Assembly (NCBI RefSeq): GCF_006345805.1
Contig: NC_043005.1
Location: forward strand, 7,440,001-7,504,000
DNA: 64,000 nt
Direction: 5' to 3'
DNA from: Octopus sinensis
Taxonomy: Eukaryota
Shown here: in pieces, positions 5,266-63,449 of the stretch
Position numbering within the stretch: position 1 is the first letter of the stretch
Layout of the letters: every line of letters starts with the position of its first letter
Notes under the pieces: model-generated
The model's input: the letters and a program-made list of their open reading frames with translations, nothing else
Told to the model about the DNA's origin: nothing
Database searches by the model: none
Program-made: the position numbers and the translations under genes

Positions 5266-5324
5266 TCAGTTTTGCTGGGTAATTTCGAATGTTGTAGCTT
5301 TTGTTTGATTAACAGAACTTGAAC
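5266..5324 (-). CDS. aGPCR putative terminal coding exon 19
   Basis: Strong acceptor ttttttctcattgcttccag|GT; phase 1 matches exon 18. Translates (S)[18 protein letters not shown]. An AATAAA lies downstream on the minus strand at 5144-5149. Confidence 0.7.

Positions 5325-63449: not shown

What the first reader, a model, noticed from the sequence alone, without database searches (positions are those of the whole stretch)
5266..63449. Adhesion GPCR with an LRR - Ly6/uPAR - SEA - HormR - GAIN ectodomain, a domain combination I do not know from any described aGPCR family
Seen: 19 phase-compatible exons give one frame in the order LRRCT, 12-Cys LU domain, SEA-like, HormR, GAIN/GPS, 7TM. Known: LRRs occur in ADGRA2/3 (LRR-Ig-HormR), and SEA occurs in ADGRF1/F5 and ADGRG6. 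I know of no vertebrate aGPCR subfamily with a three-finger LU domain. Inference: a mollusc/cephalopod-specific receptor lineage built by domain shuffling, perhaps part of an expanded family with sensory or adhesion roles. The ORF track shows only scattered pieces of it, so automated annotation could split or truncate the gene.
Basis: partly seen in the sequence, partly recalled or inferred. Interest (0 to 1): 0.85.

Follow-up and report, generated by a model that had tools for sequence, protein, structure and literature searches.

The report
Octopus adhesion GPCR with Ly6 domain
The window holds a real, intact 19-exon octopus gene for an adhesion-type G-protein-coupled receptor whose outer part runs LRR, Ly6/uPAR, SEA, hormone-receptor, GAIN. 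The gene family was already published as an octopus expansion, but its Ly6, SEA and hormone-receptor modules, and its presence in snails, bivalves and worms, had not been described.

Summary
I rebuilt the same 19 minus-strand exons (63449 to 5266). All have AG/GT sites, all are phase-compatible, and they give one 925-aa frame that is incomplete at the 5' end. The model is collinear and 82% identical with O. bimaculoides XP_052827273.1, and the orthologous locus keeps the same splice sites.

Pfam finds only 7tm_2 and GPS in the window protein.
- LRRCT: LGI1, Slit and FLRT caps, E about 1e-4.
- LU: LYPD1/Lynx2 at 3.8e-8, with all 12 cysteines aligned.
- SEA: ADGRF1 SEA at 5e-4, and Pfam SEA at 5.5e-5 in the abalone relative.
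- HormR: ADGRG6 at 5.7e-4.
- GAIN+7TM: closest solved structures are ADGRG2 and ADGRG6.

The same architecture occurs in gastropods, bivalves and annelids, so it is not cephalopod- or mollusc-specific. It is expanded in octopus. The O. bimaculoides ortholog is already listed in Ritschard et al. 2019 as "group 3", with only LRR, GPS and 7TM noted. LU domains inside predicted adhesion GPCRs were mentioned in passing for starfish.

Verdict: a new variant of a known kind, of moderate interest.

The parts
63280..63449 (-). Exon 1 of the part in the window. It encodes the LRR C-terminal cap (CxC...C...C). It enters in phase, so upstream LRR exons lie beyond the window.
   Evidence: Acceptor and donor found. 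Family profile A10 hits the LRRCT caps of LGI1, Slit2, FLRT3 and TLR4 at E 8e-5 to 3e-4. The ortholog exon maps to L001:32586-32755 with AG/GT.
62585..62676 (-). Exon 2: first third of the LU (Ly6/uPAR) domain ([19 protein letters not shown]).
59566..59749 (-). Exon 3: the rest of the LU domain, ending in [10 protein letters not shown].
   Evidence: Splice sites. LU profile A6 hits LYPD1/Lynx2 at 3.8e-8, LYPD6 at 7.8e-6 and SLURP1 at 1.5e-3, with all 12 Cys aligned.
53672..53784 (-). Exon 4: SEA domain, strand 1 and the start of helix 1.
49203..49261 (-). Exon 5: SEA domain, helix 1 to strand 2. This is a 59-nt exon with a weak acceptor by my score.
   Evidence: Found. It is conserved in paralogs and in the ortholog (90% over 20 aa; AG/GT conserved).
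46921..47066 (-). Exon 6: SEA domain, strand 3, helix 2 and strand 4. It is the fastest-evolving exon.
   Evidence: Splice sites. pN 0.23 against pS 0.03 versus the ortholog.
41986..42100 (-). Exon 7: first half of the HormR domain. Its acceptor lies 15 nt downstream of the one used in O. bimaculoides.
36412..36554 (-). Exon 8: second half of HormR and the start of GAIN subdomain A.
   Evidence: Splice sites. HormR profile A8 hits ADGRG6 HormR at 5.7e-4, and all 26 hits are class-B extracellular domains.
30432..30663 (-). Exon 9: GAIN subdomain A.
   Evidence: (weak GPR128_GAIN_subdomA hit)
26878..27049 (-). Exon 10: end of GAIN subdomain A and start of subdomain B.
24851..25009 (-). Exon 11: GAIN subdomain B.
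   Evidence: Found by a phase-constrained search. It aligns to ADGRG2 GAIN.
21424..21552 (-). Exon 12: GAIN subdomain B.
19745..19894 (-). Exon 13: GPS motif with the CSCNHL|TSFALLM cleavage site and the start of the tethered-agonist (Stachel) peptide.
   Evidence: Pfam GPS 1.1e-13. dN/dS is 0.07 versus the ortholog.
18327..18448 (-). Exon 14: rest of the Stachel peptide and TM1.
13673..13796 (-). Exon 15: TM2.
12046..12190 (-). Exon 16: TM3.
9964..10036 (-). Exon 17: TM4.
8466..8857 (-). Exon 18: TM5-TM7 and the proximal cytoplasmic tail.
   Evidence: Splice sites. Pfam 7tm_2 7.5e-35 covers residues 636-871.
5266..5324 (-). Exon 19: last 19 codons and the TGA stop.
   Evidence: Strong acceptor in the right phase. 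The tail is conserved in paralogs and the ortholog.

Best explanation
**What it is.** The window contains all but the 5' end of an intact, selectively constrained gene of about 58 kb for an adhesion (class B2) GPCR. Inferred from relatives, the full protein is: signal peptide, LRRNT, several LRRs, LRRCT, one Lynx2/LYPD-type LU domain with six disulfides, a SEA domain without the autoproteolysis motif, HormR, GAIN/GPS, a 7TM of the ADGRG2/G6 type, and a short tail.

**Where it belongs.** It is the ortholog of O. bimaculoides XP_052827273.1 / A0A0L8GYR2. It is one member of the octopus-expanded 'group 3' aGPCR family. That family descends from a receptor with the same architecture that is present, as far as sampled, across lophotrochozoans.

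**Likely mechanism** (inferred from established aGPCR biology, not shown here).
1. The GAIN domain cleaves itself at HL|T, giving a non-covalently bound N-terminal fragment and a 7TM fragment.
2. The LRR and LU modules, held away from the membrane by SEA and HormR, bind a partner on another cell, in the matrix or on the same membrane.
3. Binding or mechanical pull exposes the conserved tethered peptide TSFALLMDVYQ, which activates the 7TM and a G protein.

**Shown here.** The gene structure, the domain identities, orthology, conservation of the cleavage motif and tethered peptide across phyla, and purifying selection on GPS and 7TM.

**Inferred.** Cleavage, the ligand, G-protein coupling and physiological role.
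For: - **Gene model.** There are 19 AG/GT, phase-compatible exons giving one ORF.
- **Orthology.** The model is 82% identical and collinear with P0059. Introns are collinear with the O. bimaculoides locus at about 88-92% nucleotide identity. I mapped the window's exon borders onto L001 and moved exon 7's acceptor 15 nt upstream. The joined exons then reproduce P0059 residues 77-1008 exactly.
- **Domains.** 7tm_2 7.5e-35 and GPS 1.1e-13. GAIN+7TM against ADGRG2 1.9e-68 and ADGRG6 1e-61, and HormR+GAIN against the zebrafish ADGRG6 ectodomain 6e-24. LRRCT. LU. SEA: ADGRF1 SEA 5e-4 and MUC16 SEA 0.0096, Pfam SEA 5.5e-5 in the abalone ortholog, and an AF2 model with pLDDT 84 and strand-helix-strand-strand-helix-strand order. 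HormR, with Pfam HRM above its cut-off in the annelid relative.
- **One transcript.** A 4.2-kb Logan contig carries an uninterrupted 1155-aa ORF from signal peptide to 7TM in a 39%-identical relative. The ortholog has RNA-seq expression values in Ritschard et al. Table S2: tau 0.65, highest in retina, optic lobe, sucker and posterior salivary gland.
- **Constraint.** dN/dS is 0.71 overall, 0.07 for the GPS exon and 0.51 for the 7TM.
- **Tethered peptide.** HLT[NS]FALL[ML]DVY is kept from octopus to gastropods, bivalves and an annelid.
Against: - There are no transcript data for this species or this locus.
- The 5' exons (signal peptide, LRRNT, LRRs) are outside the window.
- Overall dN/dS is high for a receptor.
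- None of the LU, SEA, HormR or LRRCT domains reaches a Pfam threshold in the window protein itself.
- The AF2 model of the LU domain was poor (pLDDT 49).
- Foldseek placed the SEA model only among generic ferredoxin-like folds.
- Subfamily placement rests on best hits, not on a tree.
- Some family proteins carry a precomputed GAIN_ADGRA3 hit, and one paralog is named ADGRA3.
Confidence: 0.87

Rival explanations
1. There are two transcription units, or mostly separate isoforms. One encodes a secreted or anchored LRR-LU-SEA-HormR protein and the other a GAIN-7TM receptor. The 19-exon joining would then be an artefact of phase compatibility.
For: Many annotated relatives stop before the 7TM (P0031 'TLR5', P0034, P0052 'LRRC15-like', P0064 'chaoptin'). 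Others contain only the 7TM (P0001-P0006). Exon 3 could also splice directly to exon 7 in phase.
Against: - Full-length models with the same order exist in three Octopus species and in gastropods, bivalves and an annelid.
- One assembled transcript contig carries the whole ORF.
- The ortholog's annotated model uses the same exon chain.
- HormR is directly followed by GAIN in every aGPCR that has it (established knowledge; ADGRG6 alignment).
- The short models are typical of fragmented scaffolds and long introns.
Confidence: 0.06
2. The locus is a recently decayed or decaying paralog in a fast-expanding family. It is not yet interrupted but no longer functional.
For: Overall dN/dS is 0.71, and dN exceeds dS in the SEA domain. 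The S/T-x-hydrophobic C-terminus seen in relatives is lost here. The introns are full of transposon fragments.
Against: - There is no stop or frameshift in 2.8 kb of CDS, and all 36 splice dinucleotides are intact.
- All structural cysteines, the HL|T site and the tethered peptide are kept.
- pS exceeds pN significantly overall (p=0.014), in the GPS exon (p=0.008) and in the 7TM (p=0.017).
- The ortholog is expressed.
Confidence: 0.05
3. The cysteine-rich module is not a Ly6/uPAR-type LU domain. It would instead be a TGF-beta/activin-receptor-type ectodomain or an unrelated disulfide knot.
For: The best Pfam hit of the window peptide is Activin_recp (E 0.0044, below cut-off). The AF2 model is unreliable.
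Against: - With the family-wide profile, LYPD1 scores 3.8e-8 and LYPD6 7.8e-6, while TGFBR1 and ACVR1 score 0.6-1.2.
- All 12 cysteines align one-to-one with Lynx2, including LxCxxC and CCxxxxCN.
- Even the weak model's top Foldseek hit is Lynx2.
- The N-terminal profile also matches a sea-cucumber multi-LU protein that passes the Pfam CD59 and Toxin_TOLIP cut-offs.
- Activin-receptor ectodomains are themselves three-finger folds of the same Pfam clan (my own knowledge), so this rival changes the sub-type, not the fold.
Confidence: 0.04

Closest known systems
Octopus 'group 3' adhesion GPCR expansion (Ritschard et al. 2019, PMC6408891)
   Same: This is the same family. The O. bimaculoides ortholog A0A0L8GYR2 / Ocbimv22025843m is listed there as class B group 3, with LRR, GPS and 7TM hits and expression data.
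   Different: That paper reports only LRR (5 of 22 sequences), GPS, 7TM and one Death domain. Its InterProScan table has no Ly-6/uPAR, SEA or hormone-receptor entry. It treats the group as octopus-specific, whereas relatives with the same architecture exist in other molluscs and annelids.
ADGRG6 / GPR126 (CUB-PTX-SEA-HormR-GAIN-7TM)
   Same: It has the same membrane-proximal order SEA-HormR-GAIN-7TM. It gives the best HormR hit (5.7e-4) and a strong GAIN+7TM hit (1e-61). NCBI names most family members 'ADGRG6-like'.
   Different: The distal modules here are LRR-LRRCT-LU instead of CUB-PTX. No CUB or PTX was found in the window protein or in any relative scanned with Pfam. It is not an ADGRG6 ortholog by architecture.
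ADGRG2 / GPR64
   Same: It is the closest solved GAIN+7TM by sequence (1.9e-68, alignment over 487 residues).
   Different: ADGRG2 has a long mucin-like N-terminus without LRR, LU, SEA or HormR (my own knowledge, not tested here).
ADGRA2/ADGRA3 (GPR124/125: LRR-LRRCT-Ig-HormR-GAIN-7TM)
   Same: They share the N-terminal LRR block with an LRRCT cap, followed later by HormR and GAIN. One octopus paralog is named ADGRA3, and some members carry a precomputed GAIN_ADGRA3 hit.
   Different: LU+SEA sit where ADGRA has an Ig domain. No Ig domain was detected. The 7TM's best solved relatives are ADGRG members.
Starfish LyAr2 / LyAp2 (LU domains inside predicted adhesion GPCRs; PMC9410279, PMC11595613)
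   Same: These are the only published mention I found of an LU domain at the N-terminus of an adhesion GPCR. Their LU domains were also grouped with or compared to human Lynx2 and LYPD6.
   Different: They were noted in passing and their architecture is not described. My N-terminal-module profile found no echinoderm receptor at E<=1e-3. Common origin is therefore untested, and independent fusion is possible.
LYPD1 / Lynx2 and LYPD6 (single-LU, GPI-anchored proteins)
   Same: They share the LU sub-type: 12 cysteines in identical register, LxCxxC at the start and CCxxxxCN at the end.
   Different: Those are stand-alone GPI-anchored modulators of nicotinic receptors or Wnt co-receptors (my own knowledge). 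Here the LU domain is an internal module of a multi-domain receptor.

Membership tests
Adhesion GPCR (class B2) | Secretin-type seven-transmembrane domain | tested here: met
   Pfam 7tm_2 7.5e-35 covers 4-250 of 250 model positions. Best solved relatives are aGPCRs.
Adhesion GPCR (class B2) | GAIN domain with a GPS motif immediately before TM1 | tested here: met
   GPS 1.1e-13. GAIN aligns to ADGRG2 and ADGRG6. Four Cys and two Trp of the GPS are present.
Adhesion GPCR (class B2) | Autoproteolysis at HL|T and activation by the tethered peptide | not testable with these tools
   The motif CSCNHL|TSFALLMDVY is present and conserved across phyla. Cleavage itself needs a protein experiment.
ADGRG subfamily (family VIII) | 7TM groups with ADGRG1-7 in a phylogeny | tested here: inconclusive
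   Only ranked similarity is available: ADGRG2, G6, G3 and G4 score above ADGRL, D, E and F. No tree was built and no ADGRA structure was available for comparison.
ADGRG6 / GPR126 orthologs | CUB and pentraxin domains at the N-terminus | tested here: not met
   No CUB or PTX hit appears in the window protein, the ortholog or any relative scanned. LRRs are found instead.
ADGRA (GPR123/124/125) | Ig domain between LRRCT and HormR | tested here: not met
   The interval is occupied by LU and SEA. There is no Ig hit.
Ly6/uPAR (LU, three-finger) domain | Cysteine framework with N-terminal LxCxxC and C-terminal CCxxxxCN | tested here: met
   LQCQTC ... CCTGNLCN. Twelve Cys are invariant or nearly so across 14 sequences from molluscs and annelids and align one-to-one with Lynx2.
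Ly6/uPAR (LU, three-finger) domain | Significant profile similarity to known LU proteins | tested here: met
   Family profile A6 hits LYPD1 at 3.8e-8, LYPD6 at 7.8e-6 and SLURP1 at 1.5e-3. The window peptale alone is below threshold.
Ly6/uPAR (LU, three-finger) domain | Three-finger beta fold | tested here: inconclusive
   The AF2 model has pLDDT 49. Its Foldseek hits are led by Lynx2, TGF-beta receptor ectodomains and LYPD6, but at E>=0.09.
SEA domain | Profile similarity to SEA domains | tested here: met
   Support is borderline but consistent. Family profile A7 hits ADGRF1 SEA at 5e-4, MUC16 SEA at 0.0096 and MUC1 SEA at 0.3. The Haliotis ortholog hits Pfam SEA at 5.5e-5, 23.7 bits against a cut-off of 26.4. 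The window peptide alone has no hit.
SEA domain | Alpha/beta sandwich, strand-helix-strand-strand-helix-strand | tested here: met
   The AF2 model of a paralog has pLDDT 84 and pTM 0.75 with exactly this order. Foldseek returned only generic ferredoxin-like folds and no SEA entry in the top 50.
SEA domain | G|S[VI]VV autoproteolysis motif between strands 2 and 3 | tested here: not met
   The window has [15 protein letters not shown] at that position, and the octopus paralogs also lack the motif. This is a feature of cleaving SEA domains only and is not required for membership.
HormR (HRM) domain | Conserved Cys/Trp framework and profile similarity | tested here: met
   C3, W17, C30, C39, W58 and C66 are invariant. 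Profile A8 hits ADGRG6 HormR at 5.7e-4, and all 26 hits are class-B ectodomains. Pfam HRM scores 30.3 bits, above the 26.2 cut-off, in the Lamellibrachia relative.
LRR C-terminal cap (LRRCT) | CxC...C...C cap following LRRs | tested here: met
   Profile A10 hits the caps of LGI1, Slit2, FLRT3 and TLR4 at about 1e-4. LRR_8 lies directly upstream in the ortholog and paralogs. The LRRs themselves are outside the window.
Octopus 'group 3' aGPCR expansion (Ritschard 2019) | Membership of the published clade | tested here: met
   The ortholog A0A0L8GYR2 is labelled class B, group 3 in their Tables S2 and S3. The window gene is its ortholog, with 82% amino-acid identity and collinear introns.

The most novel reading that the evidence does not exclude
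The LRR-LU-SEA-HormR receptors could be a separate, ancient adhesion-GPCR family. It would be at least lophotrochozoan, and bilaterian if the starfish LU-aGPCRs are related, with no vertebrate member. In this reading its Lynx2-type LU module links adhesion-GPCR signalling to nicotinic-type receptors. In octopus those would include the nicotinic-receptor-derived chemotactile receptors of the suckers. This could explain why the family expanded in octopus. It could also explain why the ectodomain, SEA in particular, evolves fast.
Probability: 0.07. Interest if true: 0.8.

Novelty: new variant of a known kind. Interest (0 to 1): 0.45.

Why it matters
Adhesion GPCRs are classified and studied largely by their ectodomain modules, and the nine vertebrate families contain no Ly6/uPAR domain. 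Three points follow from this work.

- A conserved LRR-LU-SEA-HormR-GAIN-7TM receptor exists in molluscs and annelids and was multiplied in octopus. This adds a module type to the aGPCR repertoire.
- It corrects database names. These proteins are neither ADGRG6, ADGRA3, slit nor TLR5 orthologs.
- It gives the published octopus 'group 3' expansion a concrete ectodomain anatomy on which ligand searches can be based.

It also shows that InterPro-type scans miss three of the family's six ectodomain domain types (LU, SEA, HormR), while family-wide profiles recover them. The practical consequence is modest: it refines a known family rather than revealing a new kind of system.

Tried and rejected
- **Pfam on the window protein and its separate N-terminal pieces.** Only 7tm_2 and GPS were significant. 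LU, SEA, HormR and LRRCT were below threshold or absent. Octopus-only profiles were also too narrow: LU against LYPD1 gave 0.048, and SEA gave no SEA hit. Adding gastropod, bivalve and annelid relatives made the profiles work.
- **AF2 of the LU domain.** pLDDT was 49, so the model is unusable on its own.
- **Foldseek of the good SEA model.** It gave only generic ferredoxin-like folds, which neither supports nor contradicts SEA.
- **Third homolog search.** I added human LYPD1 to the LU profile to reach echinoderm LU-aGPCRs. The listed hits (the best 120 of 222) were all vertebrate LYPD1 or LYPD1-like proteins. Those E-values are partly circular and I do not use them as evidence.
- **First two word-indexed homolog searches.** They missed the 82%-identical ortholog, which only appeared in the exhaustive HMMER search. 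Absence from those lists is therefore not evidence of absence.
- **Tandem paralogs.** I looked for them in the 10-kb flanks of the orthologous locus and found none.
- **Another upstream exon in 63450-64000.** None was found.
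Full report

The window is AT-rich, repeat-rich eukaryotic DNA. A bacterial-style ORF list shows only isolated pieces of the gene on the minus strand. I located coding pieces from stop-to-stop frames. I then enumerated AG and GT sites with a simple position-weight score under phase constraints.

This gave 19 exons. All have AG...GT borders and all intron phases are compatible. 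Joined, they give one open frame of 925 codons plus TGA.

The first exon starts at the acceptor at 63449 and the stop ends at 5266. The frame is open at the 5' end and enters exon 1 in phase, so the gene continues upstream of the window.

**2. Independent support for the exon chain**

- *Paralogs.* Full-length Gnomon models from O. vulgaris and O. sinensis ('ADGRG6-like', 850-988 aa) align end to end with the model at 48-51% identity. This includes the three exons with weak acceptors and the short last exon.
- *Ortholog.* An exhaustive HMMER search turned up O. bimaculoides XP_052827273.1 (P0059, 1010 aa). It is 82% identical and collinear over 924 residues. tblastn of P0059 places HSPs on exons 1-18 of the window and nowhere else above noise; the short last exon gives no separate HSP.
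- *Orthologous locus.* I fetched it as L001. Its introns align collinearly with the window at about 88-92% nucleotide identity, so the two loci are orthologous in closely related species.
- *Splice sites.* Every window exon border maps to an AG or GT in L001. The one exception is the acceptor of exon 7, which lies 15 nt further upstream in O. bimaculoides. After that adjustment, the L001 exons defined this way translate exactly to P0059 residues 77-1008.
- *Upstream exons.* In the ortholog, three 72-nt single-LRR exons lie 4.4, 9.8 and 16.9 kb upstream of the LRRCT exon. That is why none is in the window, which has only 551 bp upstream.
- *Transcript evidence in relatives.* A 4.2-kb contig assembled from run SRR21372857 carries an uninterrupted 1155-aa ORF in a 39%-identical relative. 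The ORF starts with a signal-peptide-like segment and an LRRNT-like cysteine cluster. LRR_8, GPS and 7tm_2 follow in order.
- *Expression.* The O. bimaculoides ortholog has expression values in Ritschard et al. Table S2. Tau is 0.65, with the largest shares in retina (0.21), optic lobe (0.14), sucker (0.14) and posterior salivary gland (0.12).

**3. What are the domains?**

Pfam on the window protein finds only 7tm_2 (7.5e-35) and GPS (1.1e-13). Profiles that include the distant relatives found settle them.

| Domain | Evidence from family-wide profiles and relatives |
|---|---|
| LRRCT | Hits the C-terminal caps of LGI1, Slit2, FLRT3 and TLR4 at about 1e-4. |
| LU | Hits LYPD1/Lynx2 at 3.8e-8 over its whole length, LYPD6 at 7.8e-6 and SLURP1 at 1.5e-3. 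All 12 cysteines are in register, including LxCxxC and CCxxxxCN. |
| SEA | Hits the ADGRF1 SEA domain (5e-4), MUC16 SEA (0.0096) and MUC1 SEA (0.3). The abalone relative hits Pfam SEA at 5.5e-5 over 2-100 of 106 positions. An AF2 model of a paralog segment has pLDDT 84 and the strand-helix-strand-strand-helix-strand order expected of SEA. |
| HormR | The best hit is the ADGRG6 HormR (5.7e-4). All 26 hits at E<=1 are class-B receptor ectodomains. Pfam HRM passes its cut-off in the annelid relative. |
| GAIN + 7TM | Closest solved sequences are ADGRG2 (1.9e-68), ADGRG6 (1e-61), ADGRG3 and ADGRG4. |

Three caveats apply.
- The AF2 model of the LU domain was poor (pLDDT 49). Even so, its Foldseek list is headed by Lynx2, TGF-beta receptor ectodomains and LYPD6.
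- Foldseek placed the SEA model only among generic ferredoxin-like folds.
- The cleaving G|SVVV motif is absent from the SEA domain.

The GPS carries the canonical HL|T site. The following peptide, T[SN]FALL[ML]DVY, is conserved from octopus to gastropods, bivalves and an annelid.

**4. How wide is the family?**

A profile of LRRCT-LU-SEA-HormR searched against 1.84 billion representative proteins finds only 62 proteins at E<=1e-3, of which 35 are at E<=1e-30.

- Named members include many Octopus bimaculoides, O. vulgaris and O. sinensis proteins and Argonauta.
- They also include single long receptors (1062-1322 aa) from Haliotis, Nucella, Dreissena, Ylistrum and Saccostrea and from the annelid Lamellibrachia.
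- Partial models come from Mizuhopecten and the annelid Paralvinella.
- The long ones have LRR_8 upstream and GPS plus 7tm_2 downstream. They align collinearly with the window protein at 26-31% identity.
- Ritschard's Table S3 also lists one Euprymna sequence in the group, with LRR and an adhesion 7TM.

The architecture is therefore lophotrochozoan as far as sampled. It appears single or low in copy number outside octopods and multiplied in octopus. It is not cephalopod-specific.

**5. What was already known?**

- Ritschard et al. 2019 described an 'octopus-specific' class B 'group 3' of adhesion GPCRs. LRRs were found in 5 of 22 sequences. The genes were reported as co-localised, with signs of positive selection and expression in axial nerve cord, suckers and skin.
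- The ortholog of the window gene is in their tables as group 3.
- Their InterProScan table has no Ly-6/uPAR, SEA or hormone-receptor entry.
- Two Marine Drugs papers note that starfish LU sequences LyAr2 and LyAp2 are parts of predicted adhesion GPCRs.
- The 2026 Pharmacological Reviews aGPCR review does not mention Ly6, three-finger, octopus or mollusc.
- Further literature searches found nothing else.

**6. Selection**

Pairwise against the ortholog, dS is 0.134, which is consistent with the intron divergence. The values by region are below.

| Region | dN/dS |
|---|---|
| Whole gene | 0.71 |
| GPS exon | 0.07 |
| 7TM | 0.51 |
| LU | 0.53 |
| LRRCT | 0.55 |
| HormR | 0.63 |
| GAIN | 0.65 |
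| SEA | 3.4 |

For the SEA domain, there are 43.5 non-synonymous differences in 254 sites against 3.5 synonymous in 64. Fisher p is 0.03, uncorrected for eight tests.

The gene is constrained where an aGPCR must be, so it is not a pseudogene. Its ectodomain evolves fast. The SEA signal is a lead, not a result.

**7. Mechanism**

*Shown:* an intact gene for a class B2 receptor with a cleavage-competent-looking GAIN/GPS, a conserved tethered peptide and a modular binding ectodomain.

*Inferred from established aGPCR biology:*
- The receptor self-cleaves at HL|T.
- The LRR and LU modules bind an unknown partner.
- Force or binding exposes TSFALLMDVYQ.
- The 7TM then signals through a G protein.

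The SEA domain probably acts as a rigid, non-cleaving spacer, as in the SEA-HormR-GAIN stalk of ADGRG6. The C-terminal S/T-x-hydrophobic motif seen in distant relatives and many paralogs is absent from this gene and its ortholog. This pair may therefore have lost a PDZ-type anchor.

**8. Verdict**

It is wrong about lineage restriction and overstates novelty.

What is new:
- LU, SEA and HormR are recognised in a family known only as 'LRR-containing adhesion GPCRs'.
- The LU is shown to be of the Lynx2/LYPD6 twelve-cysteine type.
- The whole architecture is shown to be conserved across molluscs and annelids.

This is a new variant of a known kind, of moderate interest.

Noticed in passing
window 46921-53784 (exons 4-6, minus strand): The SEA domain has dN/dS of about 3.4 against the O. 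bimaculoides ortholog (Nd 43.5 of 254 sites, Sd 3.5 of 64 sites; Fisher p=0.03, uncorrected). The signal is concentrated in exon 6. The neighbouring GPS exon has 0.07.
   Followed up: partly
window 41986-42100 against L001:47173-47302: The acceptor of exon 7 differs between the two species by 15 nt. The window protein therefore lacks five linker residues (LREHD region) between SEA and HormR that the ortholog has.
   Followed up: yes
window 5266-5324; C-termini of relatives: Distant relatives and most octopus paralogs end in S/T-x-hydrophobic, which looks like a PDZ ligand (TKL, VKL, TSI, STV, SSI, ETNL, ETDL, ETNI). The window gene ends in TQQN and its ortholog in KIDQ.
   Followed up: no
L001:15601-28198 (O. 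bimaculoides ortholog, upstream of the region matching the window): Each LRR is encoded by its own 72-nt exon. The exons are several kb apart and share the same intron phase. This layout would make gain and loss of repeats easy and may explain the variable LRR numbers among paralogs.
   Followed up: no
window 6667-6966 (+), 7275-7721 (+), 39231-39740 (-), 43384-43704 (+), 45970-46218 (+): The introns hold transposon debris. There is a reverse-transcriptase fragment (RVT_1, 7.9e-14), a zf-RVT fragment, a weak GIY-YIG match and two near-identical ORF copies in opposite orientation in different introns.
   Followed up: partly
window e.g. 58871-59192, 35071-35307, 32642-32969, 23165-23354, 17036-17312: A short (about 200-300 bp) interspersed repeat occurs many times in the introns. 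It matches many places in the O. bimaculoides locus at 72-90% identity and looks SINE-like.
   Followed up: no
window 1-530, 12950-13140, 17700-17990, 21240-21350, 24970-25560: Long microsatellite and trinucleotide tracts produce spurious low-complexity ORFs on both strands (poly-Ser, His, Val, Thr, Cys-Val).
   Followed up: no
relatives P0031, P0034, P0052, P0064, P0025, P0049: Public records name many LRR-LU-SEA-HormR proteins without a 7TM as 'toll-like receptor 5', 'slit homolog', 'chaoptin' or 'LRRC15-like'. They are either truncated models of this receptor family or genuine soluble or anchored paralogs. The names are misleading either way.
   Followed up: partly
paralog P0055 (O. bimaculoides, 1283 aa): One paralog carries a Death domain after the 7TM (Pfam Death 3.3e-6, residues 1203-1277). 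This matches the single Death-domain case mentioned by Ritschard et al..
   Followed up: no
The word-indexed homolog search did not return the 82%-identical ortholog, although it is in the collection. The 50%-identity cluster of that ortholog holds only O. bimaculoides sequences. No comparable full-length product from the window's own species therefore seems to be in the collection.
   Followed up: partly
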